Below are positions 25,996 through 61,349 of a stretch of DNA of 64,000 bases, piece after piece. The first letter of the stretch is position 1; every line of letters starts with the position of its first letter. The position numbers and the translations under genes were made by a program. The notes under the pieces are model-generated. The model saw only the letters and a program-made list of their open reading frames with translations. It did no database searches and was not told the origin of the DNA. This DNA comes from Oculina patagonica. Taxonomy: Eukaryota. The stretch spans positions 17,236,001-17,300,000 of the forward strand of contig NC_135763.1 in NCBI RefSeq assembly GCF_052425735.1. Direction: 5' to 3'.

Positions 25996-27324
25996 ATGTC
26001 TCTCGATGTGGCCAGTAAAGACTATTGGGAAGCGACATCTAGATGTTCAATCAGCGAGAGATGCAAGTTCATGTTTAACAACGAATTCTTGAGCGATGTG
26101 AAGTTTGCTGTTCGCCAAGGCGGAAGTGAAAGTATGAAGAAGATTCCAGCTCACAAGTTCTTGTTGGCGATCAGTAGCCCAGTATTTTTTGCCATGTTTT
26201 ACGGTGAATTGGCGGAGACGAGAGATTCTATCGATATCTCTGATTGTGAGTACGAGAGCCTGTTGGAGTTGTTCCGTTTCATGTACAGCGATGATGTGAA
26301 CTTGAACCCAGACAATGTCATGCAAGTTCTTTATTTGGCGAAGAAATACATGCTCCCTTCCCTTGCTGACAAATGCACAGAGTACCTTGGAAAGAACCTG
26401 GATGCCTCAAACGTGTTTCATGTCTTCCCGGACGCACAGAAGTACGAAGAGAAAGATCTTATGGATCGTTGCTGGGAAGTGATAGATGAACAGGCAGACG
26501 AAGCTGTGACATCAGATGGTTTCGTGACAATCGAGAAATCAGTGCTGGAGGAATTAGTCGAGAGAGATTCGTTGACCGTCAAGGAGGTGAAATTATTCAA
26601 AGCTGTCGATTGCTGGGCTACAAAGGAATGTGAAAAGCAAGGCCTAGCAGCAGAAGGTTCTGTGAAAAGAAGGATCCTTGGAGAACGGATCGTTAAAGCA
26701 ATTCGTTTTCCGGTGATGGAAGAAAAGGAATTCGCCGATGTTGTCCTAGACTGTGATATACTAACAAAGAAAGAGACTTTCGCCTTGATGAAGTATTTTA
26801 ATTCTGTGCTGAATTTTCCAGTGGGATTTTCTGAGGTCAAAAGAGCTGGTTCGCATCAGCGAATGTACAGGTTTGGATCAGGAGACAGATTGCAAGGGTG
26901 GTATTATCCTTGGAACTGTTCCGATTCGATAACTTTTTTGGTAGACAAAAACATAAAGCTTCATTCAGTGCGTCTGTTTGGTAGCGAAAGTAATGAATAT
27001 TCAGTGACCCTAAGAGTGTATGCTAATGGTGATACAAAAACAAAGACAGGCAAGTTTCTGTCTAAACTTGTACAGAGTGAAGGAGGCGATTACCACGGCT
27101 TTGATATCGTGTTTGAGCCTCCAATTGCGATACAGGCACAGATCCAGAACCGTTTTCAAGCCTCCATTAGTGGCCCACCTTCCTGGTATGGGCAAGGTGG
27201 CCTGTCTCGTATAAAATACTCTGGAGTAACATTTTACTTTAATGAGACCAATGTATGGCCAGGCCCAGAACGAACTATTGTTAAAAACGGACAATTTTCC
27301 GAATTCGAATTTACACTGAACTAA
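25996..27324 (+). CDS. BTB/POZ-BACK-PHR protein, BTBD3/BTBD6-like (intronless), copy 2
   Basis: 442-aa ORF paralogous to 3072-4421; ends GQFSEFEFTLN. Confidence 0.93.
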   Translation: MSLDVASKDYWEATSRCSISERCKFMFNNEFLSDVKFAVRQGGSESMKKIPAHKFLLAISSPVFFAMFYGELAETRDSIDISDCEYESLLELFRFMYSDDVNLNPDNVMQVLYLAKKYMLPSLADKCTEYLGKNLDASNVFHVFPDAQKYEEKDLMDRCWEVIDEQADEAVTSDGFVTIEKSVLEELVERDSLTVKEVKLFKAVDCWATKECEKQGLAAEGSVKRRILGERIVKAIRFPVMEEKEFADVVLDCDILTKKETFALMKYFNSVLNFPVGFSEVKRAGSHQRMYRFGSGDRLQGWYYPWNCSDSITFLVDKNIKLHSVRLFGSESNEYSVTLRVYANGDTKTKTGKFLSKLVQSEGGDYHGFDIVFEPPIAIQAQIQNRFQASISGPPSWYGQGGLSRIKYSGVTFYFNETNVWPGPERTIVKNGQFSEFEFTLN

Positions 27325-29937: not shown

Positions 29938-32900
29938 TTAAAGAATCTCATTCAAACGGCAGTGCTCATACGCTAGCCTTTGTTTGGCTGTTTGGAACGC
30001 CTGCTTTATATCGCTAAATTGTTCATACTCGTAAACAGCACGGGTCACATTTTTCCCATCAAATGGATCTTCGATGCGAATATAAGGCCTGGTCCACTTT
30101 TTATCAAAAGGGACACGTTTAGTGCTCGCTAGACGAACTGATAATACTTTATACCAGTCAAAGTCACAGTAAAAATTAAAGAAACCGACGAAAAGACTGC
30201 CAAGGCTCTCTGTGTTAGACGACTTATATGAGGTAACAACTGATGGAAGAGAGCCACTGGTCAGCTTATCAGCTAAAGCGCTGGCGCTCGACGATGAACT
30301 GAAGTGTGTTGGGCTGGAGCTTTGTAAAGATGGTAGGACGGCTGGGCTGCAACCTCTCTGTAAGTAATAAATCACCAAAAGGACCACGGCGAAACCTATA
30401 TTAAGAGAAAACCTTTAGGCGATGTTCTAATTATTTTCAAATTACTATGGTTTTTATTTATATGCATCTTTAACTTTCTCTGATATTCTTTTACTATATT
30501 ACTCAAAAAAGCACCGCGGCTTTACTAAAATTTCGACGTTTTGATGCGACGCTAATTCAAAGCTTAAAGGCGAAATTTAAATAAGTCGCCTTTGCTTTGG
30601 TATTGCGTCACCTCGCTTAGTGATTGGTTTAAACATGTTTAAAAATCCTCGCGCAACTAGTTCCCCGCCAATCAGCCGTGATTCGCTCTCGATTGCTTCG
30701 AGTTTTGATTGGCTTACTGGATTGTTTGCGTTTGGTTTTGGTTTTACCATACTCAATTAAAAATCGCTCTTCCAACGCACTAACGTAACTAGAGAACTAC
30801 GTCACTGACCCGAAAGCTTGTGGTCATGCGCACCAGTGATCCTCGACACTTGCGCCCAGTACTTGACGATCACTACCAGCGGAACAACCCTGGGGTCCAT
30901 TTTACCATAACACTTTTGTAAGTAGGTGTTGAATATGGAATTCTGGATATCGACACTGATATCTCCCTCGAGTCTTTCACTTCGGTCCTTGAGCTTCAAT
31001 ATGGGGACTACTGCAGTGCTGATCAGCTGGAATAACAAACACAAGAAACAATGGAAGAATACACAGTGTAGCTAAACTCGTTTCCACGTCTGGCAGCGTA
31101 AAAATTCAAGATTTCCTCAGCACAATACGGAGAACACACATCCTTGAACAAGGACAACAAATTCAAAAGCAAAAAAACAAACTAACAAACAAACAAAAAA
31201 TGATGTTTTCTTATTGCTGTTTGTTTTTCTTGTTTTTGTTTGTTGTTTTTTGGTTTTTTAAACAAAAGCCGCGAACATCGTATCGCAGTGGCGCCACGAT
31301 ATTTTTAAACGCACTCCTTTACCCGGTAACTGCATTATCATTTCCGTTTTTTGGAGTGTCACGCAGTGCTCGGTAGATGTGTTGCGTGACACAGCCATAT
31401 AATGGTCCAGTACCAAGGAGAGTACAAGGGTAACTAGTGGTAACCACAGGTTAGAAAGTGCGGGCCTTGACGCACTTAGACAAGGTACTGGTAGGCAGTG
31501 CCGATAATTATAAATAAACGACTGAACAAGGAGGACTGAAATGATCAAATGGACAATAGACAATTATTCTGAGTAACGCGTCACGCAAGGATTTTTCGCA
31601 CGCGGTGCAGTGTGAATTTAGATGTGATTTTTCTCAGTCGGTAAACTCGCTATGTTGTCAGTGTTATAAAGAATCTCTCGACAATAACCGCTGTTGGAAT
31701 CATTCGCTTCACCCTGGTTTATCTGTGATACAATCACATCAAATGTTCTCAAAAGCAACACATAACGCCTTCACGGAAGGTTTATCTAATGTGACAAGCT
31801 GTTTTTAAAATATCGCTCTTGGAGAACAGATTTTTCTCTTCCGGTTTTACGACAAACTGTCGTGATTAACACATTTTCGCCTTCCGATCGTGCTTAGTGG
31901 AAGAACAAAGATTTTCAACTTCCGGTTCGGTCCTGGTTTATAAACGTGGCACGCACGCGTAAAACGCAATCCGCTGGTCACTGTCAAGATTAGGGTTGCG
32001 GGCCTCTCTTGGGCCCGCAATTAATGGGTTGCTTGAGGCTCAAACGCAAACGTAGAATGAGTTTCAAGGAAAGTGCGATACTCTGAACATACGATGTGGG
32101 AGAAGCAGATACGCACAACCCGGTGGCAACGATAAAATTAACCAATGGAGTCGAACCGTTTCTTCATTATTTTACTCTATTAGTTTCAGTTCTGAGAAAA
32201 AAAAATCTTGAAAAAAAATGTTTTAAACAAGAATGCGCTTGCAGGACTGATAAAGTCTTTGCAAAAGCCGCGCAACACCTTCACCCGGAAACATAATGCC
32301 GGAAGTTTCGACGGTGTAAAATTGTCTGTTTAAGTGCTGATTAGTCTGCGAAAAATGGAGATTTTTACAATAGCTTGCTAAACCCACACTCTTTTCCTCT
32401 GTGCAATGAAAATTAAATTGATAGTAAACAAAATGCAAGCTGAAAATTATCAACACGTATTGAGATTGTTTGGACAATTCAAAAAAGGCGTGATTGGAAT
32501 GATTAGAATCGTAAATACTTGTTCGGCAAACCGAAACCGAAACTAACTTACTGAGACATTTTAAATAAATCATTTTCTTTAATTCTTTTTGCGATTTGCG
32601 CGAAAATAGTAAATGTCAGCACAGAACATCGATAGTGTTCAATCCATGACAAGTCAGCGCACAACATGTCACTTTTGAAACAATAATTCAATATTTTTGC
32701 AAAGCATCACTCTTAAATCTGTTTTTTCGTTGATCCTTAAAGTAAGGTATTTTTACTTTGATTCAAGATCTTGAAAACTTGAAATGAGAACAATGAATCT
32801 TAATTTAAGAAGCGATGTCTTAAATCAAGAGCTAAAGAACAGGCGACCATGTCTTGAGAGAAAAATTCTCAAAATGAGATAAAGATGTCTCAAAATGAGT

Positions 32901-35900
32901 TTAGAAATATCTTAAAGCAAGATATGAACCTTGGGACTTTAAAAATGATTTCAAGCTCAATAAAAAGCAAATCTTTTTATAAAACAACTTTTAATTCACT
33001 TCTTAACACCAACATACAACCATTACAAATAACTCATTAAAATAAAATAAAGCAGGTGAATTTTAATGCTAAACTAACCCTCTAAGCACCATGCTGATCA
33101 AACTAAATTCTTTGAGGAACAAAACAGATTAGCCTTTGAACTTCACACCTGCCTTAATTAAAGAACAAACAACTTCTTCCAATTAAAATTACAAGAAATG
33201 TATGCTACAAGTGGTAAGACTCTAAGTTGATTACATGTAACTACCATAATTTGAAGGGCTAACAACAATAATAATGCTATTATGGTATTTAAGTTAAGTG
33301 TAAACGCAATCTATTTAAAGGTGCTATTATATACGAGAGGCAGGTCATTCAAAACATGACTTAACTAATCCAGGTTTAGTACAAGTTTTTAATTTAGTTC
33401 TGTAGCTAGCATCAACTCCACAAAATGTAAGCTCTGACTATGCTCTTAATTTCAAAATCAATTTTAAAATTTTATGCTAGATTAGCCCTCTTAATTGCAA
33501 CAACTTTCGAGGAACCAGTTCCTGCAGTCCCAGTTGCAGCTAACCCTTATGCTAACCCTTTCACTGCAAGTGAAAGTAATTACAATTTTCATTGAAACTC
33601 AAAATCTGCTATAAAAATTAAACACTGGAAGTTAGTCATCCAAAACCATAGCTATCTTACAAAAGCATTGCAAAAATATTTCACTTCACTGTACTGGCAA
33701 CACCTCATCATGATGTTGACTCCATACATTGAAAAGCTAGTTGATTACACTTTATGAGTAACGGTTCAATTCAGCACGTGAAAGGGTTAATTTAAGCAGC
33801 AGCAAAATAATTTTCCTTCGTTGCTATGTATAAGCTACCATTAATTCTGTTAGCATGAAACACTTGGTGCCTGTACAAGTGGGTATGTAGTGTTACTTGG
33901 TTGCCTCCAGGAAGATCAGGGTCACATATCTTATACGCTACAAGCTTGTCACAGTATGACTCACAGTCCATGACTTTAGTGACAAAGAAGGGGTCTTGCA
34001 ATTGTATAGCATACCAGATGTTTAAAATCTTTGCAAACTCTGGAAGCCCATGCTCATTCAGTCCTAGCAACAAGTAGTTATTGTCACCACAAATATATTT
34101 TGTACCATAAACAACCACTGATTTTCCTTCAAACAGAGTACAATCTTCAAAGTCGATTTCATAAAATCGTGCAATAAGGCTTTTTGCATATTCTTGTTTA
34201 TTTCCTGTGAGGGGTTTACCACTTCCCAAGTGAATATCATCCCTAAACAAAGAGCATGGGTCATTGTCATCAACAGGTAACATATCAGCATATTCCATTT
34301 GCTGATGTCGTTTTGCAAGTGTAAGTGGTAAATTTTTAAAATTTTTAATCCGTCTTACTATGTCCTTAAAGTAAGAGTGCTTGGCTTCAAATCTCATGCA
34401 CCATGTCCTTATAAGAGGACCAAACATCATCATTTGAGAGGGCAAGTGCACTAAGAAATGCTGCTTAGGTAAAATTCTTGCCCCATAAATTTCTTTAAAA
34501 AGAATTAAATGTTCTTTAACGATTCGTTTAAGGTTCAAAATAGAACTTGAAGTTATCTTTTGTGCAAAGCAAATTCCCATAATTTCCAGGAGGGATGTAA
34601 AGCATTTCCACTGTGGACTTTCACTGTCTGTGATACCTCCTAAAATGAGAGGAAGGATCCTGGATAGCTCCCACATTTGAGCTGCATTTTGACCAAGGTT
34701 ACTGTCAGACTTAAAATCTATATCATCGTTTTTTATGAACGATGGTTTATCCTTTACATTAGAATAACCATAATGGATATTTTTAATTTGTGTGTTCAGT
34801 TGATCTAATGTGACTAAACCAGGTGTATGAAAATACTGTTTCAACAAAAACTTAAGTTCATAAGACAAAACTCCTTCCAGAAATATATGCATAATGTCCT
34901 GTGGTAGTTGTTTAGTAACATCAAAGTCTGGTATATTGCACAACGAAGACCTTCTGTTGATGCCATATTGCTTTGAAAAATATTTTCGTAAAAAAGGTGA
35001 ACCTGCATTTTCAATATCACTTAGCTGGTGTTCATGCCAATCACTATCCCGAAGGAGAAATTCCTCTTCAGTAAAATGCTGCTGCATGGATTCCCAGTCG
35101 GTCATGCAGTGACGGCACTTGCGGTATGCACCACCAACACCCTCTTTGTAACCACCTAATGAGTTACTGGCTGGGGTATCTGCCAGGACGGCCAAAACAG
35201 AACCATGTAAATAAATTTTTCCACCAGCAATTTCAAAAGGATATCCAAAATCACTTGATAACACCTTAAGGTCTTCAACAAGGGGCTCCAGTATCCTATC
35301 AATGCCATATTTCTTTATGTAATTTACACTGCAAGTTGCAAATAAATGAATTGATTTCAATTTTGATCTGTATTTGTAATCTATGTTTGCCAGTTGGTAA
35401 TAAAAGAACCCAATTTTGTGCATTTTGTTTGTAAGTGGATTGGCAACATTTACATCATCATAATAAAGCAGAATCTTGAGTGATCTATCATCTGTTGAGA
35501 ACAAAGGGTGACTTTGGACAAATGTGCCATCACTTAAATCTTCCATCACATGTCCCTCCTTTGGCAACAGGTCCGAACTCTTGTACACCATGTTGAAAAT
35601 TTGTTTTGATCCAGATAGCTGGTTTTCTATAGATTTTAAAATGGAAATGTAATAAAAGCATTCATTACGTTTAATTATTCTTTTTTTGTTATTACGTTTG
35701 GCTTTTTCACGTTTCTTGCCCAGTAAAACTGCTCGAGGCTCCTAGAAAGAACAGAAAAAAATCAGATGTAAGTGCATGTACAGCACTTATACCATATAAT
35801 TATACATGAAAACATGAGAAAAGCAGAATCTTGCCACATTGTGTAGTTCCAGAAAATATCTATACTACCCCCACACTGAAGGGATTGGAAATTCCTGAGG

Positions 35901-38189
35901 GCCACTGGAGGTCACAAGGACCAAAAAAAATAAAGAAATATGTGGAGTTTAATTGGAATTTCCAGATGGGTGGGGGGCCCTTTTAAAAATCCCTTCCATG
36001 GGAGGGGGGAGGTATGGGTATGTTGTGGAACTACACATTATAATTAAGTTATATGTACCACACATAGAAGTTTTCCATCTGTTGGTAGCCATCCCTTCTC
36101 GAGGCCATCAAAACAACTTGACAGTTCATCAAAACAATATGTTGCTTCGGGTATGTCTTCCAATTGAACATCAGCATTCTGCAAAGCTTGTGCCAAGTTC
36201 CTTCTGAGGTCATGCAGCGCACCTTGAAAGAGTCGGGACGTTGCACATGCAATGTTTTCCACTGTTCGTTGTGGAATACGATTTTCTTCTTTGATTTTCA
36301 CAAGGTAATTCAATGTCTTTTGCTGTAAATTTGCACCACTAGTTACATTCATTGATTCACTACCATCTTGTGATTCATCATCAGTTGAGCTGTCACCTTC
36401 CTGATCTCCAACAGTTTCAAAGGAAAAGAAAGGATCAGCACCAGGAACAGTGTCATCGGCTGAATCAACAGCTTCAGTTAACGACAAGGAGTCACTGTAT
36501 TCATCATGATCGCCAACACTTAATTCACACCAATTCCCTAGAAACAAGAAACCATCAATAATTTTACAAACAGTAATATTTAATAATTATAATTAATAAT
36601 TACTGTTTGCAAAAATTGCCAATAGCTGCTCTTTATGGCTTATCTTAAGAAATAAAATATTTTTTTAGTCACTAGTACCGCTGCTGTAGTACTTTTATTC
36701 CATCTTCTCTAATACTCCAGTCCAGTCCATGACCTCTGGCTCTCTCAAATTTCAATCGACACTTAACGATACTATCACAGACTTAATTTAAAAAAATGGT
36801 GGCTTAATACAGTTTTGAGGGGTAAAATTGCCAAACTTTTAACTTTTTTGTAAAATGCTCAAAATATTTACCTTCACAAGCTGCGTAACTCGGATCGGGA
36901 CTTCTCAGAAATCGATGATGTTTTTCACGCACGTGACGAACGAAGGTATTCGCTTTTTGGAAAGTCCTCCCGCAACCCTCTATGCCACACACGGTGTTCA
37001 ACTCTTCGAATTCCGTGGAATGCCTTGTGTTTATATGTGTTAATAAAATGCACAACTGAAGTGCCGCAAAACAAGCGCAAATAGCACATTTCCAAACCAT
37101 GTTAGCTTTATGTTCAGGACCTGTGAACGACTATTTGGAATTCGGGGAGTTTCGGAATTCGTCGTGTGAGAGCCGGAGATCTTTGACGGAGCCGGAGATC
37201 TCCACCCGTCAACGGTGTGGCCAATGAAATACTACCAAGATGTGTCGTCACGAATTCGTTTTGGCGGGAGTTGCCAGTAGTTTTTCGGGGTTTTTGCAAC
37301 CATGATGGATTCAGCGGACGAAGAGGTTGCTGGCTACCTTTCTGAGGGATTTACTCCACCGTCGAAGAAAAGAAAACGACAAGTAACTTGTCAACAGCTG
37401 GTCAGTTCTCTTAAGAGTCGTTGGGGACTTTCGGAATCAATATGTCGAGTTCTTGAAGGTTAGTAGTGAGGTCTAATAATGGCGATAATATTGACCAATG
37501 CAATACAATGTTACAGTAATGTGTTTCTTGTTTATTCAAAGAGAACGCTACTTCTCTAATTCTGTGACATTTTAGAATATGGCTGTTCACTCGTTTTAAG
37601 CTTAAATTATATTTCTTCTTTTACATTGTTAACTCGGCCGCTTTGGTATTATTGGAAAGTCACATTCAACAGTTTTATGGGTTAAATTTGCAGGCTAATG
37701 GCGCGCGCCCGCCCGCCACGATTGAAATCACAACAAAATTTGGCCGTTTTCAGCCGCTGCCGAATTGAACGGAATATAAAAATAACATCTTCAAACAGCG
37801 AAGAAATATCTTTTTAACAGTAAAAAAAACAAAAAAAGCGTGGATGGGCAAAACTTAAGAATATTTGAACGGATTGTATATGGGGTTTAACATTGTAAGA
37901 AACTGTTCATCCTATCAGTTTTTCAATCAACTACCATGTAAGAACGCTCAAGGTACATATTTCTCTATTATGAACCTTTGCTTGTGTCAATTAGAAGTAA
38001 AACATCCTCTAATGTTACGTTTCCTAACGAGTAGTTGAAAAAAAAAGGACTAGACTGACATTGATCATTCTTAATCCTGAGAACAGAGTACAAAGTAGTC
38101 AGTCAATGCACATCTCCGGCCAGGCAACGTTCCGTATTGTTGCAGTCCAATGGCTTCTTCTTGTAATTTTGCAAGTTGTTGTTGTGTGT

Positions 38190-38221
<32 letters not shown>

Positions 38222-41200
38222 TTGGGGGGGGGGGGGAGGGGCGAGGGGGTGGGGGTGTGGTTAAAACTTGGTGATGATGGTTTGCATTATGAAATTGTGC
38301 TCCAGAATCTGTAAAATTTCCAGGACAGTCATCTGACACTCTGCTATTTGTCTTTTTCCAAGAAAACAAAGTTGATGGAGACACTTTCATGAACTTAACA
38401 AGGGAAGACCTTCCTTACCTCCTAGGAAAGAAAAGTACTTTCAAAGAAAGAAAAGAGTTATGGGGCTGTCTGCAGCGAGTGGTAAGATCATTTGTCCAAA
38501 ACATGGAGCATTGAAACTAAAGTGAATATCCTTTCTGGGACAAAAACCTAGCCTTGGTTGCAGACAAAATTACCTTGCAGTGATGATGTTTTTAGGTTGT
38601 CAAAACTGTGAATGTAACTTATTTCTTATAGCGGGCTCTGTTGTCTTTGTTTATTTAGCAATACAGTGGCTTGAAGTCTCCTTTTAAAGAGGTGAGGAAA
38701 TTTAATGAATTTTATGTGTTAATGTAAATCTATATATGGAACGTAGCTGCCATTTCCAACAGCTACATTTTCTGTTATTTTACTGTTAGTATTACAACCT
38801 TACAATTAAGAGTAGTGTATGGCATTTTTGCATTGTTCTGAATGAAATAACATGTTACTTGCTAGCACATCAGAAACGGCAACACTAATATGTACTTCTA
38901 TTATAAGTTTAGCATTAAACTTGCACTAGATAACTTTTCTTTGGGTGTACTGGTACATGTATGTGACACAAACATATGCGAGAATATTTATTGTCTCTAT
39001 GGTTTTCATGTTAGAGAGAAAATGAAGAGTTGGCGGCCTCCCCTTCAAGTATCGATACTATGTCAGTGGAGAGTGATAGTGGAAGCGACAGGGCAACACC
39101 AACACAATCCCAACCTTCAACATCTAGATCAGTCCCAAAGTTGAAAAGGACTCATCGAATGGAACTGGAAAGACAGAACAGGGGACAGGAATCACCTGCA
39201 GAACAGGATTTGAGTAAACCCAGCATCCAGCTAGAGTCGTTCAAGTTTCCTGTATCTAAACGTGTCATGCAATATTGCAAAGAAGGAAAATCTCTTGAAG
39301 AAGAAGATAGAAAGCAGTTGATACGGGACTGTGTGACCTGCTTGAAAGCTGAGTGTGGGGACCATGTAACCAAGGAGCAATTCAAATCAGCCAGCCAGTT
39401 TATTTGTGGCAAAGTGCCAGTATTAAAGGATGTAAAACCACCACACTGGCCAGAAGATGAGGAGTTCCATTATTCTGTAAGTGATCTTACCTCCTCTGTC
39501 AGGGAATAAAATAATAAAGGGATAAATAATTAAATCTATAACCACAGTCTTGGACAGTTTGTGCCCTGATAGGGGTCAGTTTGTGTGTTTCCTCAAAATA
39601 GTTGTTTCTGGGGTAGAAGTAGTTTAACACTTAGAAAATTAAGTGTTACCTATTAAAGAAACCAAGCATATATTAGTCCAGTGAGAAATGTAGGTACAGT
39701 GTAGTACAATATCACTGTTGCCACTGAGAAAGTAACTTTCACTTTTTTAATTTATGAAACATACTGTACTTTTTTCCTTGCAGATGTTGTGATTTCAATT
39801 TATCTTTGGTTCAAAATTTTTCAAACCAGTTCAATTTTCATTTTCCTTTGTTGCAGTTTATGATAACGAATAGAAGTCCAATACTTTGATCAATTTTAAT
39901 CCAAAGCTAAATCACCACAGCATACATGCAACAATTGCCAAGTGCTTTTCTGCTGTATGACCTGTAAATGTTGGTGTACCTTTTAATTGTGTGGTTGATT
40001 CAGATTGATATTATGTTGTTTCCCTTCCAATAAGGCTTCTGTGGAGTATCTTCTCAAGAAAAGATACACAAATCTTAAAAGCAGAAAATCAAAAGACCCT
40101 GGAAAAGCTGTTAACCACCCAGTTCTTGACACAGTCACTGCTAAAGATGCTAACAGCCTGCACCAAGAACTCACCAAAGAGTTACAGAAAGGGCAAAAAA
40201 AAAACCCGGTCAATTGGGCAGCTGTGACAAGTTTACAGAAGTTGTCATTTTCGGCAAGGAAAGATGAGATACAAGCAATGTCTGGCACAAAGGTGGTAGA
40301 TCAAATCCTTGAGAAGTATCCATTCCTTGATAACGAAAGAATTGTAAGTGAAATAATTGTTTATATCCATGCACTGATTAGTTTCCATTAACAGAAATCA
40401 TTCAATTCAATTTTTACACTGATTATTATTTGGGAAGATTTTCAGGGTAATGTAATTGTAATAAATAACCATACAGTTCATAGGATGGTATGCCGGGTTG
40501 CAAAAATAACCAGTTGAAGGACACTTTATAGCCTCCCACAGGCTGTAGGCCTGGGTCACAATTACTATGGTGAGAAAAAAAAATGTTTTTCCCTGAATAG
40601 TTTAGGTATAAAAAAGAAGTGCATGTACCTTAGAATGCTAATGCCCTCAGCCCTTTAGTAAGATACCCATGCAAAACCTTAACAATTTCCTCTTTGCTTA
40701 TATTGGCAGCTGTGGAGTGAGTTGGAATTACACATTTCAGAAGAGCTAACGAAAGAGAATGTGCAGGTTGAGAAGTTTTTTGAGCGCTGGCGAAAAATTT
40801 CAAAATGCTTTGTTGATGAAGACTGTGATGAAGGTAACATCAAAAATTTTGTTTCTAGGGAACTTAATTAACACAATCTGCGCCCTCTGAATAATAGCCT
40901 TGGTGGGAGCAGTGACCTGAGGCTTAAAAGTCCTTTGATCTTTAAGAGGAGATTGTTTTTCTGCTTGCTGGCTAATGCATCTTTTGACAACATGAAAACT
41001 CTAAATTTAAGTGCAGGTAAAGGTTACAAGGTTACAGTATGCAGTGAAGAGGTAATGTTTGTGGTTTGTTGTTGGTGGAATTATTGTTCCATTGAGTTGC
41101 CCATTTCACACTGGGGTTCAGTGTTGAAGGTGGCACCTTTATGGACCAAAATCTACCAACTACGACCCAGAAACTTTACCTTTCGACCTTTCAGTATTAG

Positions 41201-43977
41201 GTCGGTGGCGGGCTGATTTTGTAGGTGAAAAGAAAATAAACAACAGTTAATGGTTGAGTTTGAAACTTTAAAGTTATGATATTAAAAGTAATAATTTTTA
41301 TTTCCATTCCCTATGCAGATGACCGTTGTTCTGCAGCACTGGAGAAAATGCCCAAAGTATTCAATTCATCTGCACCAGCACTTGTCTCATTCATACCAGT
41401 AAGTCTAGTACTTTGTGTCAATTAACACAGTAAAACACTTGTTGAGAAAAACGCAGTGCTTTTATCACTGATTTTTGTTACTAAACATGTTTTGGCTAAC
41501 TGACTTAGGCTTTTATTGTGTTTAAAGAGTTAGCTGATTGAAAGCCTAAAGTAAACATCAAATATCAAAGTCAGTGACAAAGCAGAAACTTTATCTTAAC
41601 AACTGTTATGTCGTGACTACATGCAGTTACTGGCTATAGTAAAACCCTGGTGTTGTATATATTATAGCACAGGACCAGAGAAAGTATTTACATTGGCATG
41701 GTAGTGATATTACTGAGTCTGGACTGTGAAAACTGGCTGTAAAGTGCAGATCTCTTGCAATATATCAATAAACTGCAAGGCTAACTAACTTATGAACTGC
41801 AACCTGAAATAGATAGTATATCTCATGTTAATTCTCATATGATTTTTTTTTTGTTCCAACAGCAAGGCAGTAGTCCAGAAGACTTCCTGAAGACATTGCC
41901 ATCAAATGACCCCCAGTTAGTTTGCTTCACTGGAGAAGATGACATTCGGGATCCTTCGTCATATCAGTGGTTCATAGTTGTAGACAAAGAAATTGTGCTA
42001 GAATGTGAATCTCCCTCAGGCTGTAAAGCCCTTATAACTTTAATTGCAGTGCATTTTGCTTTCAATCTTAAATACCACAGTAATCATGCAGCCATGTTTA
42101 AATTTATCCATGAACATGTGATTGGTGACATTCCCAGAAGGAAATCATATGCATTTAAAAAGCTGGAAAACACTCTTCTCTCTAAGTTAGAACTACCTAC
42201 CACTAATGGTGAGTAAGCATTAAGCAGTGTTTCCTTGAACATTACCTTCTAGTTGTCAAGATTGATGATGTATCGTGCACATTTCATTATTGAAGGTTTT
42301 GTTATCAATACACTTTAGAATGTGCAGTCTGTACACCTGTTGTTTTACTTTGATACTGAGTTCTGTGCTGGTTGTTTTACTTTTCATTCTGCAATATAAC
42401 AGTTAAATTGTGCAGATTTGTTCAAATTTATTCATGAACATGTGCTGGGTGACATTCCCAGAAGGAAATCATATGCATTTAAAAAGCTGGAAAACACTCT
42501 TACCTACCACTAATGGTGAGTAAGCATTAAGCAGTGTTTCCTTGAACATTACCTTCTAGTTGTCAAGATTGATGATGTATCATGCACATTTCATTATTGA
42601 AGGTTTTGTTATCAATACACTTAAGAATGTGCAGTCTGTACACCTGTTGTTTTACTTTGATACTGAGTTCTGTGCTGGTTGTTTTACTTTTCATTCTGCA
42701 ATATAACAGTTAAATTGTGCAGATTTGTTCAAATTTATTCATGAACATGTGCTGGGTGACTTGCCCAGAAGGAAATCATATGAGCTGGAAAACACTCCTC
42801 TCTAAGTTTTTGAGTATTCAAGATATTGTTAACCATATACTTAAAAATATGCAGTCGGCACACCTGTTGCGTTACTTTAATTCTTTAATACCGAGCTGTG
42901 TAGTTTGTTCTTTACGATATATGGGCTACTTTTGTGAACCCAGTATATTATTTGTAACTCAACTTGATGTTAAAGATGGCAGTCACTGAACTACAAAATA
43001 AATAAAATTAAAACATGTTTTGATTCAGTACAAGAGTTCCTTTCATTACTGCTCTTCATCACCATCCTAACTGGGTAAAAAAGTAATTTAGCTTTCGACT
43101 ATCAACATATTCCTTGCGTTATGAGAAAGTAGTAACATTTTTTGAGGTGTGGTTTGAACGACTCCATTCAAACTTGTATTGAGATCTGTATCCGATAAAG
43201 GTATCCTCGTTTTAAGAATACTAATCTTGTTTTGAGACTGTAGAGATCAAGTTCCTTTATTCTCAAAACAAGGCTCTTATCCTTATTTTAAGATACTGAG
43301 TTCCTATTTCAAGATTCCATACAATCTCGTTTTGAGGACATGAATGGTCTTATTTCAGGAACTCAAAATAAGAAAATTTCACCTTAATTCAAGGATACCC
43401 ACTTTAAGAGTGCATAAATCGAACTTCACGTTTAAACGCGGTTCAAACAAGTGCATTCATGAATGGACAAGGCATAATAATTGTTACTCTAGAAGCCAGT
43501 TCAGTCACAATCTTATACAGTAAAGTTAATAACCGGTTATAAATTACAAACATACAGCCGTTTAAACTAGTTGGCTTATCGGTGAAAAAACAATCGCAAT
43601 TAACAACACAGTGAAATCCGGGAGTGAAATTTTACCTCTGTTTCAATTTCAGGTCTTTTCCTCAAGTCGTCTCGAATTCGTCTTAGAACTTGAACCCCAG
43701 CATCCATAAATCCGTAAAACATCATCCTTTCTGTTTGAACAACCGTCAAATCTACATCACATCCCTCGATAGCAAAGCCGTTTGTCGACGAACCCACCAG
43801 AACGAGTTGCCGAGTCGGGAATATTTGCTTTATGTTTTGCTCTAAACTGTCGCACCACCTTTTCTTCTTTCTCGCTGTCGCTTCGCTTTCTTTTACCGAT
43901 TCATACTTTTGGATAATCTCACGAGTTAGCGATTCGCGTGAGCGTAGAAACATTGTTGTTCCCGAAATGTCTGACAT
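29938..43977 (-). CDS. GLD2/TENT2-like non-canonical poly(A) polymerase (terminal nucleotidyltransferase), 3 exons, ~338 aa
   Basis: Exons 43977-43636, 31026-30810, 30395-29938 (GT-AG, phases 0 and 1). Motifs LVGSSTNGFAIEGCDVDL, VPILKL..GDISV, KYWA..LSGFAVVLLVIYYLQ, IRIEDPFDGKNVTRAV. The start codon could lie further upstream. Confidence 0.85.
33792..37100 (-). CDS. CACTA/EnSpm-type DDE transposase with N-terminal C2H2-like zinc fingers (3 exons, ~885 aa)
   Basis: Exons 37100-36872, 36537-36059, 35741-33792, phase-consistent with no stops. Motifs YYISILKSI, YYDDVNVANPL, ADTPASNSLGG..CRHC, PQDIMHIFLEG, PKQHFLVH, GPLIRTWCMRFEAKH. N-terminal CAIC..H..H and CGIEGC..HVREKH. Confidence 0.9.
35840..36037. 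mobile_element. Degenerate MITE inside transposase intron 2
   Basis: TIRs TGTGTAGTTCCAGAAAATATC and GGTATGTTGTGGAACTACACA. Confidence 0.65.
37302..42216 (+). CDS. Transposon-encoded SAM-domain accessory protein, SAMD3-like (7 exons, ~534 aa)
   Basis: Exons 37302-37458, 38363-38481, 39015-39476, 40035-40343, 40710-40833, 41319-41398, 41863-42216; all GT-AG and in phase (1605 nt). NLS PPSKKRKR; SAM-like WGLSESICRVLEENKVDGDTFMNLTREDLPYLLG; C-terminal ALITLIAVHFAFNLKY..FKFIHEHVIG. Confidence 0.82.
42096..42900 (+). repeat. Tandem triplication (~310-bp unit) of the accessory gene 3' end and UTR
   Basis: AAATTTAT(C/T)CATGAACATGTG..GGTGAC..CCAGAAGGAAATCATATG recurs at about 42100, 42424 and 42731. 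Confidence 0.85.
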
Positions 43978-59587: not shown

Positions 59588-61349
59588 TTACAGTGGAATT
59601 TGGACTCCAAGCCACCATTGCGTGGTAGCTTGATCATTTCGAACACACCGGTGATTTGGGTTGGCGGATCCGTAATGTCCAAAGCTGTCTTCGCTGTTTG
59701 TACTGTTTACCCACTGGACACAGTTGGCGCATCCGCATGACTGACCTACATCGCTCGCAATATGGTTGTGCTCATTATATACACCATAATACCTTGCTTT
59801 ACAATCCCTGCATTCAATACCTCGAATATTTATACGTTCAAATAACTTGCATCCGTTACTACCTACTAACTGAATATAAGAAAGTTTACCTCTTAAATAA
59901 TCAGTGTAACTAAATCCTTTGTCGAACTCACAAGTGGCTCTGACATGGGTCGAGTCAGAAAGGAGGTGTGTGCGCGCACTAAGGGACAAGCGGTGCTCAG
60001 AGAATTGAGGATCATTAGCCCTTATTGGCATGTCCGCCAAAAAATCGTTCTTAAAGTCATTCTTTTTTATCTTTTCAAAAGATTCTACCAGAGTCCAGAT
60101 AAAGCCCGGCTCGCTGGTGAAATCGCAGTATACGTTGAACCGCTCGGTATTGTTATGATTACTTATCTCATAGACTCCATTCTGCAACGAGCTGTCCGAG
60201 GCGTAATAGGAGGAACATGAATGCAACGTCAGCGTTGTCTCGCAAAAATTCCCTGTAAACCCAGCGACGCACGAGCAGGAAAACTTGACCGTGACGTTAT
60301 CACAGTGCTCTGTGCACAAGCCGCCATTCAAGCAAGGATTTGTCCTGCAACAGCCATTCATACAGCTTCCGGCAGCTTCCTGGGAAGGGAAAATAATGTG
60401 ATAAAAGGAAGTAAGCCAGGTGGAGACTTGGGCATGAGGTTAATTCGCGATATCCACAAGTTTGTATATTACACGTAATATTTATTTTTCCCTCATAAGA
60501 TATTTGTTTTTGTAGCACATTTTTCACTTTTGTATAACTCTGGATAAGTGCGGCTGAAGACAGACTCACAGTGCATTTATTCAAATCGGTTCTCCAATTC
60601 AGCTGATACTATCTTCAGTTTTGCCTGATAGACTCAACGTTTCTATCAGACGTTTTCTGAATTGGCTGTATTAAAACAATCAACTGTCGTTCAAATCTAT
60701 CGTAGCCTGGAACTAACAATGTCATCACCCAAGAGTGATACGATATGAAAGTGGACGTGTCAGGGGCGGATCCAGGGGGGGGGGGTGGGGGTGGATTGGG
60801 TGGCTAGCCTCCCCCCTTGATCCACAAGAAAAAAGACAATTAAGACATTTAAATAGAAAATAAGGACAATGACAGTCGATAAAGTTTTTAAACTTTAAAA
60901 AAATTATTGAAGTGAACGTGTGCAAATGGAATGCTTGAAGAAGTAAATGTGAACGCGAACAAAATAATGCTAAAATGAAAGTCTTTGTAGACAATTTTAC
61001 TCACATTCCTGTTGAGTTCTTGTTTCACATCAAAGTGTTTGTATCCTTGTACATCGTAAAAGTCACCAGAAGCGAGCAAGCGGTCTTGGTCCAGCAGTTC
61101 ACATCTTGTTCCTTCAACCTGAAAAGCCAAGCAACGGCAACTTGACACGCAGGCCGAAAGGCACTGGTGAGGGGCATACACAGTCACGTTTTGGAACGTG
61201 TGACCAATAAGAGCTTTGTTGACGATCACGTGATTTTCTTCCACGAAACTGCCTTTGTAGCACGTGCCAACACATGTAAAGTGTGCTTCCGCCGGAGAAG
61301 AAAAGGAGACGAGGATGACCATTACGAAAATAATATCTTGGGAAGGCAT
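59588..61349 (-). CDS. Secreted protein: signal peptide, PAN/Apple-like, EGF-like and fibrinogen-related-like domains (~378 aa)
   Basis: Coding exons 61349-61005 and 60379-59588 (phase 0); probable 5' UTR exon ending near 62943. Hydrophobic N-terminus; C..AC..SCRCLAFQ..CEL; CRTNPCLNGGLC..CSCVAGFTGNFC; SCSSY..GVYEI..VYCDFTSEPGFIWTLVES. Confidence 0.8.

What the first reader, a model, noticed from the sequence alone, without database searches (positions are those of the whole stretch)
37302..42216. SAM-domain accessory protein may polymerise on transposon ends; possible link to SAMD3
The SAM-like domain is split across exons 1-2 and invisible in the ORF track. It is followed by a disordered Ser-rich linker, a helical basic region (LIRDCVTCL..SVEYLLKKRYTNLKSRK) and a C-terminal FAFNLKY-type domain that I recall from SAMD3-like proteins. 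SAM domains commonly form head-to-tail polymers. Such polymers could bridge the many subterminal motifs to pair the ends, or interact with SAM-containing chromatin repressors (inference).
Basis: inference. Interest (0 to 1): 0.7.

Follow-up and report, generated by a model that had tools for sequence, protein, structure and literature searches.

The report
SAM-domain partner gene of coral CACTA transposon
This is a real, transcribed gene for a nuclear-looking SAM-domain protein that travels as the second gene of a cut-and-paste (CACTA/En-Spm-type) transposon, always head-to-head with the transposase, but its proposed polymerisation on the transposon ends and its kinship with human SAMD3 remain untested.

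Summary
The gene at 37302-42216 (+) is real. Spliced contigs from three studies show GT..AG joints at all six predicted junctions.

It lies inside a complete 10.7-kb CACTA/En-Spm-type element (32708-43412). The element has a 10-bp CACTCTTAAA inverted repeat, a CAT target duplication, and arrays of a 12-bp subterminal motif. The gene sits about 200 bp head-to-head with a C2H2-finger, Tnp2-like transposase gene.

- **SAM call: supported.** A profile of the exon-2 half hits only SAM domains in the PDB (BICC1, E=2.5e-5). An AlphaFold model of the sea-anemone homologue's N-terminus matches SAM domains (Foldseek probability 0.97-1.0; VIA Z up to 8.4).
- **Pairing with the transposase: conserved.** It recurs in two close copies and two remote relatives (transposase 25-57% identical per aligned segment). 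The gene is under purifying selection (dN/dS about 0.24).
- **Rest of the protein: no known relative.** The middle and C-terminal domains have no Pfam or PDB match.
- **SAMD3: no link found.** No search returned SAMD3.
- **Untested.** Polymerisation and DNA binding.

The scan noted the same kind of SAM partner gene before on other DNA of this genome (s1-313578, s1-271148, s1-291757).

The parts
32708..43412 (.). Complete CACTA/En-Spm-type DNA transposon carrying two divergent genes
   Evidence: The ends are CACTCTTAAA and its reverse complement, flanked by CAT on both sides. Coordinates first taken from note s1-316950 and then checked.
32708..32717 (+). Left terminal inverted repeat CACTCTTAAA, preceded by the 3-bp target duplication CAT (32705-32707)
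43403..43412 (-). Right terminal inverted repeat (TTTAAGAGTG on + strand), followed by the 3-bp target duplication CAT (43413-43415)
32735..32921 (+). Left subterminal array of the 12-bp motif TCTYAAANYRAG (5 perfect copies, 4 of them on the + strand, plus near copies)
   Evidence: All 9 perfect matches in the 64-kb window lie in the two subterminal arrays. There were 35 matches at 1 mismatch or fewer, against 15.2 expected; 0 of 100 shuffles reached 35.
43173..43409 (-). Right subterminal array of the same motif (4 perfect copies, 3 of them on the - strand, plus near copies, the last overlapping the inverted repeat)
36804..37100 (-). First coding exon of the transposase gene (C2H2 zinc-finger-like)
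   Evidence: Weak Pfam C2H2-type hits. 81% identical in L002 and L007. Exon borders not verified.
36044..36547 (-). Middle coding part of the transposase gene (acidic/helical, no family match)
   Evidence: 63-78% identical in L002 and L007. Exon borders not verified.
33792..35591 (-). 599-aa ORF of the transposase gene (Tnp2-like core)
   Evidence: Pfam Transposase_21 E=0.0014 and DUF4218 E=0.08, both below the curated cut-offs. 82-83% identical in L002 and L007, and 25-57% per aligned segment in L008 and L009.
37302..37458 (+). Exon 1 of the partner gene: start codon, NLS-like PPSKKRKRQ, first half of the SAM domain
   Evidence: Joint 37458|38363 in X1 and X2. Conserved in L002 and L007.
38363..38481 (+). 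Exon 2: second half of the SAM domain
   Evidence: Joints. A profile of this half hits BICC1 SAM at E=2.5e-5, plus ANKS6 and ANKS4B SAM.
38659..38691 (+).
   Evidence: Joints 38481|38659 and 38691|39015 in X1 and X4. AG/GT borders, and conserved in L002, L007 and L003.
39015..39476 (+). VPVLKD)
   Evidence: Joints. 16 related ORF fragments. Alignment A8.
40035..40343 (+). Exon 4: basic stretch (LLKKRYTNLKSRK) and conserved region ending at YPFLDNE
   Evidence: Joints. Collinear with the Exaiptasia protein.
40710..40833 (+). Exon 5
   Evidence: Joints.
41319..41398 (+). Exon 6
   Evidence: Joints.
41863..42216 (+). Last exon: conserved C-terminal alpha/beta domain (FAFNLKY motif) and the stop codon
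   Evidence: Joint 41398|41863 in three runs. 59 relatives by exhaustive phmmer. AlphaFold model with pLDDT 81. dN/dS about 0.1.
42406..42808 (+). Two tandem copies of the tail of the last exon (42406-42501 and 42713-42808), in the 3' region of the gene
   Evidence: RNA contigs run from 42124 to about 42455 without a joint.

Best explanation
The stretch is the second gene of an autonomous CACTA/En-Spm-type DNA transposon of an anthozoan, a stony coral according to earlier notes of this scan.

The gene has eight exons and is transcribed and spliced. It starts about 200 bp from the transposase gene on the opposite strand, so the two probably share a bidirectional control region.

Its roughly 545-aa product has these parts, in order:
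- an NLS-like basic patch;
- a SAM domain;
- a Ser-rich linker;
- a conserved middle region;
- a conserved alpha/beta C-terminal domain with no relative in Pfam or the PDB.

I think it is a transposition accessory factor, the functional counterpart of maize TnpA. On this reading it enters the nucleus, self-associates through its SAM domain, and joins the complex that the zinc-finger transposase forms on the 12-bp motif arrays at both ends. There it would help to pair the ends or to control the reaction.

Shown here: the gene model, its expression, the SAM fold, the conserved linkage to the transposase, purifying selection, and the motif arrays.

Inferred: nuclear import, self-association, and any contact with DNA or with the transposase.
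For: **Expression and splicing.** GT..AG joints occur at every junction, in contigs from 3 studies.

**Element anatomy.** A 10-bp CACTC... inverted repeat and a CAT target duplication. All 9 perfect copies of TCTYAAANYRAG in 64 kb lie within about 240 bp of the two ends. The transposase ORF gives weak Transposase_21 and DUF4218 hits.

**SAM domain.** The 7-sequence profile of the exon-2 half finds only SAM domains in the PDB: BICC1 E=2.5e-5, ANKS6 0.3, ANKS4B 1.0 (earlier). The AlphaFold2 model of the Exaiptasia homologue's N-terminus, built with window exon 2 in its alignment, has pLDDT 85.8. In Foldseek, 44 of its top 50 matches are SAM domains, most with probability 0.97-1.0. In VIA-align the best matches are SAM domains: EphA5 Z 8.4 at 1.8 A over 64 of 69 residues, then p63, CASKIN2 and SLy1.

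**Linkage.** The same head-to-head pair occurs in L002 and L007, with transposase 82-83% and partner exons 59-75% identical. It also occurs in remote L008 and L009, with transposase 25-57% per aligned segment and the C-terminal domain 28-38% identical, and there too the partner starts with a split SAM.

**Selection.** dN/dS is 0.23-0.25 for the partner and 0.16-0.19 for the transposase gene.

**Nuclear signal.** The NLS-like KKRKR patch is conserved as KRRK in L002 and L007.
Against: - No DNA-binding or other known domain was recognised outside the SAM domain.
- The C-terminal model has no convincing fold match: best Foldseek E 0.48, best VIA Z 4.7.
- Pfam's own SAM models hit neither the exon halves nor the N-terminally short Exaiptasia homologue.
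- The transposase has its own C2H2 fingers, which could read the subterminal motifs without help.
- SAM domains are often monomeric or bind other partners, so a SAM fold does not show polymerisation.
- A pipefish protein with the C-terminal domain has no transposase within 10 kb.
- Scan notes report copies that keep the SAM gene but lack the transposase (not tested here).
- The window's own SAM domain was never modelled as one chain, because the exons were not joined.
Confidence: 0.6

Rival explanations
1. The partner is a regulator or adaptor, not an end-binding scaffold. The transposase's own C2H2 fingers read the 12-bp motifs. The SAM protein either modulates the transposase, as an inhibitor or dosage control, or docks onto host SAM-containing proteins such as Polycomb-type repressors to influence silencing of the element.
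For: No DNA-binding domain was found in the partner. The transposase starts with a conserved C2H2-like exon in the window, L002, L007, L008 and L009. SAM domains of Sfmbt, Scm, L3MBTL3 and PHC3 are among the structural and sequence neighbours.
Against: Nothing singles out Polycomb-type SAMs. The best sequence match is BICC1, and the best structural matches are Eph, p63 and Caskin. The role of the conserved C-terminal domain is left unexplained.
Confidence: 0.3
2. The gene belongs to the SAMD3 family: either vertebrate SAMD3 descends from such a transposon partner gene, or the transposon captured a SAMD3-like host gene. This is compatible with either mechanism above.
For: The C-terminal domain does occur outside Cnidaria, in a pipefish and a parasitoid wasp protein.
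Against: Exhaustive phmmer with the C-terminal exon against 1.84 billion representatives gave 59 hits. The only full-length one was an 'uncharacterized' Exaiptasia protein, and no vertebrate protein of SAMD3 size appeared. NCBI names the Exaiptasia, Entelurus and Leptopilina relatives 'uncharacterized', not SAMD3-like. The profile search returned no SAMD3 either. No paper links SAMD3 to transposons. These searches cannot see very distant kinship.
Confidence: 0.12
3. The gene is passenger cargo: a host gene picked up by, or lying beside, the transposon, with no role in its life cycle.
For: CACTA elements are known to capture host sequences (general knowledge). A pipefish relative has no transposase nearby.
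Against: The same head-to-head pairing, with the same exon layout, persists across transposases that have diverged to 25-57% identity per aligned segment. The gene is under purifying selection comparable to the transposase. The gap between the two start codons is only about 135-200 bp.
Confidence: 0.07

Closest known systems
TnpA of maize En/Spm (CACTA superfamily accessory protein)
   Same: It is a second protein, besides the transposase, encoded by a CACTA element. That element also carries arrays of a 12-bp motif in both subterminal regions. TnpA binds those motifs and is needed for transposition (background as summarised in PMC1636069).
   Different: No detectable sequence similarity: no Pfam hit of any kind, including the plant En/Spm families. 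Here the partner is a separate, divergently transcribed gene, not an alternative splice form of one transcription unit. It carries a SAM domain. DNA binding is not shown.
SmTRC1 of Schistosoma mansoni and other animal CACTA elements (PMC1636069)
   Same: An animal CACTA-type element with a Transposase_21-like transposase and additional, fast-evolving non-transposase products proposed to act like TnpA.
   Different: SmTRC1 makes its extra proteins by alternative splicing of one unit, and they have no recognised domain. Here there is a distinct gene with a SAM domain and a widely conserved C-terminal domain.
Oligomer-forming SAM domains (BICC1, ANKS3/ANKS6, Caskin, tankyrase, Polycomb-group SAMs)
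   Same: The five-helix SAM fold. BICC1 SAM is the best sequence match (E=2.5e-5, 25-27% identity), and these domains are among the best structural matches.
   Different: No shared context. Those are host signalling, RNA-binding or chromatin proteins. Whether this SAM has working mid-loop and end-helix polymer surfaces was not tested.
Exaiptasia diaphana LOC110247362 (uncharacterized protein, isoforms X1-X4; P0055, P0094-P0096)
   Same: The only full-length annotated relative found. It is collinear with exons 2-7: 34% identity over exon 3, 31% over exon 4, 34% over the last exon. Its isoforms differ in the C-terminal tail.
   Different: It has a shorter N-terminus, with SAM helix 1 largely missing as annotated, and an extra insert of about 110 residues in some isoforms. 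Its genomic neighbourhood could not be fetched.
Human/vertebrate SAMD3
   Same: From general knowledge, not tested here: an N-terminal SAM domain followed by a long uncharacterised region of similar total size.
   Different: No similarity could be demonstrated, and SAMD3 was absent from every search result.

Membership tests
SAM domain superfamily | Compact five-helix bundle of about 65-70 residues | tested here: met
   AlphaFold2 model of the Exaiptasia homologue's residues 1-72, with window, L002, L007 and L003 exon-2 rows in the alignment: pLDDT 85.8. In Foldseek, 44 of the top 50 matches are SAM domains, with TM 0.50-0.73 and rmsd 2.1-3.0 A. VIA-align best Z is 8.4 at 1.8 A over 64 residues of the EphA5 SAM. 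Caveat: this is the homologue, not the window's own chain, and helix 1 is short in it.
SAM domain superfamily | Significant sequence similarity to known SAM domains in the right register | tested here: met
   The profile of 7 second-half sequences found three PDB hits, all SAM: BICC1 E=2.5e-5 (chain residues 29-58), ANKS6 E=0.3, ANKS4B E=1.0. The exon-1 half alone gave no SAM hit.
SAM domain superfamily | Match to Pfam SAM_1/SAM_2 above the curated threshold | tested here: inconclusive
   No hit for the exon halves or for the N-terminally short Exaiptasia segment. The intact spliced domain was not scanned, because the exons were not joined.
Polymer-forming SAM domains | Head-to-tail self-association through mid-loop and end-helix surfaces | not testable with these tools
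   No multimer prediction or biophysics was available. Similarity to BICC1, ANKS and Caskin SAMs is only suggestive.
CACTA/En-Spm (CMC) DNA transposons | Terminal inverted repeats beginning CACT and a 3-bp target site duplication | tested here: met
   CACTCTTAAA at both ends, with CAT on both flanks.
CACTA/En-Spm (CMC) DNA transposons | Transposase of the Tnp2/Transposase_21 type | tested here: inconclusive
   Transposase_21 E=0.0014 (18.3 bits against a cut-off of 28.6) and DUF4218 E=0.08. The co-occurrence of both and the end structure point the same way, but the curated threshold is not reached.
CACTA/En-Spm (CMC) DNA transposons | Arrays of short subterminal repeats in both ends | tested here: met
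   All 9 perfect TCTYAAANYRAG copies in the window are at 32799-32921 and 43206-43293. Related clusters and the same right end occur in L002.
TnpA-like accessory proteins (homology) | Sequence similarity to plant En/Spm TnpA-type families | tested here: not met
   No Pfam family hit for any exon at E up to 1, nor for the Exaiptasia protein. Functional analogy remains possible.
SAMD3 family | Homology of the non-SAM part to SAMD3 | not testable with these tools
   No SAMD3 sequence or model could be obtained. SAMD3 was absent from the exhaustive phmmer search with the last exon and from the word and profile searches.

The most novel reading that the evidence does not exclude
The partner protein forms SAM-driven head-to-tail polymers. 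These polymers line up on, or bridge, the multi-copy 12-bp motif arrays of both ends, either directly or through the zinc-finger transposase. That would give a polymer-scaffolded transpososome, a way of pairing ends not described for eukaryotic cut-and-paste elements. The vertebrate SAM protein SAMD3 could be a domesticated descendant of such a gene.
Probability: 0.15. Interest if true: 0.8.

Novelty: new variant of a known kind. Interest (0 to 1): 0.5.

Why it matters
Plant CACTA elements need a second protein (TnpA) to recognise and pair their ends. For animal CACTA-type elements the equivalent is essentially unknown.

Here the partner gene is conserved, expressed and under selection. It has a recognisable protein-protein interaction module (SAM) and two conserved domains of unknown fold, and it is tied to the transposase across deep divergence. 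That gives a concrete candidate to test.

It also adds a transposon context to the SAM domain. And it defines a widespread metazoan domain, the FAFNLKY-type C-terminal domain, that is absent from Pfam and the PDB.

Tried and rejected
- **Family scans per exon.** Pfam and NCBIfam scans of each exon gave nothing.
- **Exon 1 profile.** Against the PDB it gave only a chance Cas9 hit.
- **Exon 3 word search.** It returned only exon-sized ORF fragments without names.
- **Searches seeded with the Exaiptasia protein.** The word search found only the protein itself. The profile search with A3 found only short fragments plus that protein.
- **Fragment alignments A1 and A5.** MAFFT stacked non-homologous exons on top of each other, so both were discarded and not used for any search or fold.
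- **C-terminal domain.** Foldseek found no PDB fold match (best E 0.48). VIA-align found only partial thioredoxin-like similarity at Z 4.7, treated as noise. Profile searches of the middle and C-terminal regions against the PDB, and Pfam scans of all 50 C-terminal sequences, gave nothing.
- **Look-ups that failed.** P0003, P0055 and P0096 were not on record.
- **Loci that say nothing about linkage.** L001, L003 and L006 are copies truncated or disrupted by retroelement insertions. L004 (pipefish) and L005 (989 bp) are uninformative.
- **Literature.** Searches for SAMD3 with transposon, EnSpm with SAM domain, and SAMD3-like found nothing relevant.


Full report
**What is at the coordinates**

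- 37302-37458
- 38363-38481
- 39015-39476
- 40035-40343
- 40710-40833
- 41319-41398
- 41863-42216

All have GT..AG borders and compatible phases.

Public runs that hold this DNA were found, and four of them were laid on 37000-42900. The runs are coded and guessed to be RNA.

Their contigs carry GT..AG joints at every predicted junction: 37458|38363, 39476|40035, 40343|40710, 40833|41319 and 41398|41863. The joints appear in up to four runs from three studies, with no other letters in most of the listed exon pieces of these spliced contigs. The joints are read as GT..AG on the + strand, so they belong to a + strand transcript.

It has an AG acceptor and a GT donor, and it is conserved in related copies. 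The gene therefore has eight exons and the product about 545 aa.

Contigs cannot give expression levels or transcript ends.

**The element around it**

The gene lies in a 10,705-bp element at 32708-43412. The coordinates came as a lead from note s1-316950 and were then checked.

- **Ends.** The ends are a perfect 10-bp inverted repeat, CACTCTTAAA, flanked on both sides by CAT. That is the CACTA/En-Spm signature with a 3-bp target duplication.
- **Subterminal motif.** A 12-bp motif, TCTYAAANYRAG, has 9 perfect copies in the 64-kb window. All lie at 32799-32921 or 43206-43293, mostly pointing inward, with further one-mismatch copies beside them. There were 35 matches against 15.2 expected, and no shuffle of 100 reached 35.
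- **Transposase gene.** On the minus strand sits a gene with three coding parts. The first is a C2H2-like exon (36804-37100). The second is a middle part (36044-36547). The third is a 599-aa ORF (33792-35591) with weak Transposase_21 (E=0.0014) and DUF4218 (E=0.08) hits, both below Pfam's cut-offs.
- **Spacing.** The transposase start codon (37100) and the partner gene's start codon (37302) are 201 bp apart, head to head.
- **Host context.** The whole element sits in an intron of a minus-strand host gene for a Cid1/GLD-2-type nucleotidyltransferase.

**Is it a SAM domain?**

Each half alone is invisible to Pfam.

A profile of the exon-2 half from four copies plus the Exaiptasia homologue put two SAM domains on top of the PDB list: BICC1 at E=0.031 and Sfmbt at E=0.44.

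After adding the equivalent halves of two remote relatives, all three PDB hits were SAM domains in the right register: BICC1 at E=2.5e-5, ANKS6 and ANKS4B.

I therefore folded the N-terminus of the only full-length annotated relative, Exaiptasia LOC110247362 residues 1-72, with the exon-2 rows of the window and its copies in the alignment (A7).

- The model is confident: pLDDT 85.8, and above 90 for residues 11-60.
- In Foldseek, 44 of the 50 best PDB matches are SAM domains, most with probability 0.97-1.0 and rmsd 2.1-3.0 A.
- An independent VIA-align scan of 48,161 chains is likewise headed by SAM domains. The best are EphA5 at Z 8.4 (1.8 A over 64 of 69 residues), p63, CASKIN2 and SLy1.

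The Z values are moderate in absolute terms. But the list is dominated by one family covering the whole domain, and it agrees with the sequence profile. I regard the SAM call as confirmed for the family.

Two caveats remain. The window's own domain was never modelled as one chain. And helix 1, encoded by exon 1, is short in the anemone protein.

**The rest of the protein**

- **Exon 1.** It carries an NLS-like PPSKKRKRQ, conserved as KRRK in L002 and L007.
- **Exon 3.** It opens with a Ser-rich stretch and continues into a conserved block (A8).
- **Exon 4.** It has the basic LLKKR... stretch and a conserved end (A9).
- **Last exon.** It encodes a conserved domain. An exhaustive phmmer search of 1.84 billion representatives found 59 relatives, nearly all exon-sized ORF fragments from eukaryotic contigs. 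The named ones come from Exaiptasia diaphana, the pipefish Entelurus aequoreus and the wasp Leptopilina heterotoma, all 'uncharacterized'.
- **Fold of the last exon.** Its AlphaFold model (pLDDT 81: three strands, then three helices) has no convincing PDB match by Foldseek (best E 0.48) or by VIA-align (best Z 4.7).
- **Other scans.** Profiles of the three regions find nothing in the PDB. None of 50 C-terminal sequences has a meaningful Pfam hit.

So no DNA-binding module was recognised. That is an absence of evidence, not proof.

**Is it tied to the transposase?**

I fetched loci around related ORF fragments.

- **Close copies.** L002 and L007 come from two different ENA assemblies. Both show the same order and orientation: transposase ORF (82-83% identical), middle part, zinc-finger exon, then exons 1-7 of the partner (59-75% identical). 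L002 also keeps the same right end and motif clusters near both ends.
- **Disrupted copies.** L001, L003 and L006 are broken by retroelement insertions.
- **Remote relatives.** L008 and L009 are more telling. Their C-terminal domain is only 28-38% identical. Both have a C2H2-finger plus Tnp2-like transposase, 25-57% identical per aligned segment (combined E about 1e-48 to 1e-55), head-to-head with the partner. In both, the partner again begins with a SAM domain. In L009 both halves are seen, split where the window's domain is split, and the two start codons are about 135 bp apart.
- **Selection.** Summed over exons without joining them, dN/dS between the window and L002, L007 or L001 is 0.23-0.25 for the partner. 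It is about 0.1 for the last exon and 0.2-0.5 for the SAM exons. The transposase gene gives 0.16-0.19.

The pairing is therefore old and maintained by selection. That argues against passenger cargo.

**How it probably works**

By analogy with maize En/Spm, TnpA binds 12-bp subterminal motifs and is required together with the transposase TnpD (summarised in PMC1636069). On that analogy the partner is most likely an accessory factor of the transposition complex.

The SAM domain offers self-association or docking. Its nearest sequence relative, BICC1, and several structural neighbours (ANKS3/6, Caskin, tankyrase, Polycomb-group SAMs) form oligomers, but many SAM domains do not.

Which protein reads the motif arrays is open. 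The transposase has its own conserved C2H2 exon, so the partner may act through the transposase rather than on DNA.

**SAMD3**

No SAMD3 or SAMD3-like protein appeared in any search. The named relatives are 'uncharacterized'. No paper connects SAMD3 with transposons.

The single-sequence search would miss very distant kinship, and no SAMD3 sequence or model was available for a direct comparison. The link is therefore unsupported rather than refuted.

**Novelty and verdict**

Two-protein CACTA systems are classical in plants. Animal CACTA elements with extra splice products have been described (SmTRC1). A separate, divergently transcribed SAM-domain partner gene was not found in the searchable literature.

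The scan itself has noted the same kind of gene on other DNA of this genome. Note s1-313578 reports an '8-exon SAM-domain gene', which agrees with the mini-exon found here. Notes s1-271148 and s1-291757 report similar genes.

I class it as a new variant of a known kind, of moderate interest.

**Limits**

All searches were by exon and by reference.

'Stony coral' rests on earlier notes of the scan and on the cnidarian nearest relative.

Noticed in passing
window 29941-30387 (-) and 43603-43977 (-): The transposon sits in an intron of a minus-strand host gene for a Cid1/GLD-2/TUTase-type terminal nucleotidyltransferase. The palm-domain exon (MTPAP-like_central, E=2.9e-16) is on one side and the PAP_assoc exon (E=1e-7) on the other. 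The partner gene is antisense to this host gene.
   Followed up: partly
window 42406-42501 and 42713-42808; L007 15830-18041; L002 13668-13809: The tail of the last exon is tandemly repeated downstream of the gene (87.5% and 70% amino-acid identity). Each copy begins with an acceptor-like TGTGCAG. A GTAATC donor-like site at 42080 inside the last exon would join in frame to copy 2 and give an alternative C-terminus. No such joint was seen in the RNA contigs. Related copies also carry extra last-exon pieces, and the Exaiptasia isoforms X1 and X2 differ only in the C-terminal tail.
   Followed up: partly
window 3072-4421 (+) and 25996-27324 (+): Two intronless paralogous genes for BTB-BACK-PHR proteins (BTBD3/6-like), 449 and 442 aa, lie about 23 kb apart.
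   Followed up: partly
window 37000-37458: A 4210-nt contig of run X1 covers the intergenic 200 bp together with exon 1 of the partner, and continues leftwards over the transposase side. It ends exactly at the exon 1 donor. This is compatible with overlapping divergent transcripts or with host pre-mRNA. Strand and ends cannot be read from contigs.
   Followed up: no
This indicates a short, highly repeated sequence, probably a small mobile element or repeat, inside this intron.
   Followed up: no
L004 (Entelurus aequoreus chromosome CM067118.1) 10001-13170: A pipefish 'uncharacterized protein' (P0071, 232 aa) carries the C-terminal domain, has an internally duplicated segment, and has no transposase within 10 kb. 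It may be a remnant or a domesticated fragment.
   Followed up: partly
L008 10238-10489 (+) and 11283-11489 (-): Two copies of the C-terminal domain exon lie tail to tail about 800 bp apart. Only the minus-strand one belongs to the partner gene that faces the transposase at 13885-16513.
   Followed up: no
window 59588-61349 (-): ORFs of 257 and 153 aa with an EGF-like module (E=6e-4) and Cys-rich sequence. This is probably a secreted host protein gene.
   Followed up: no
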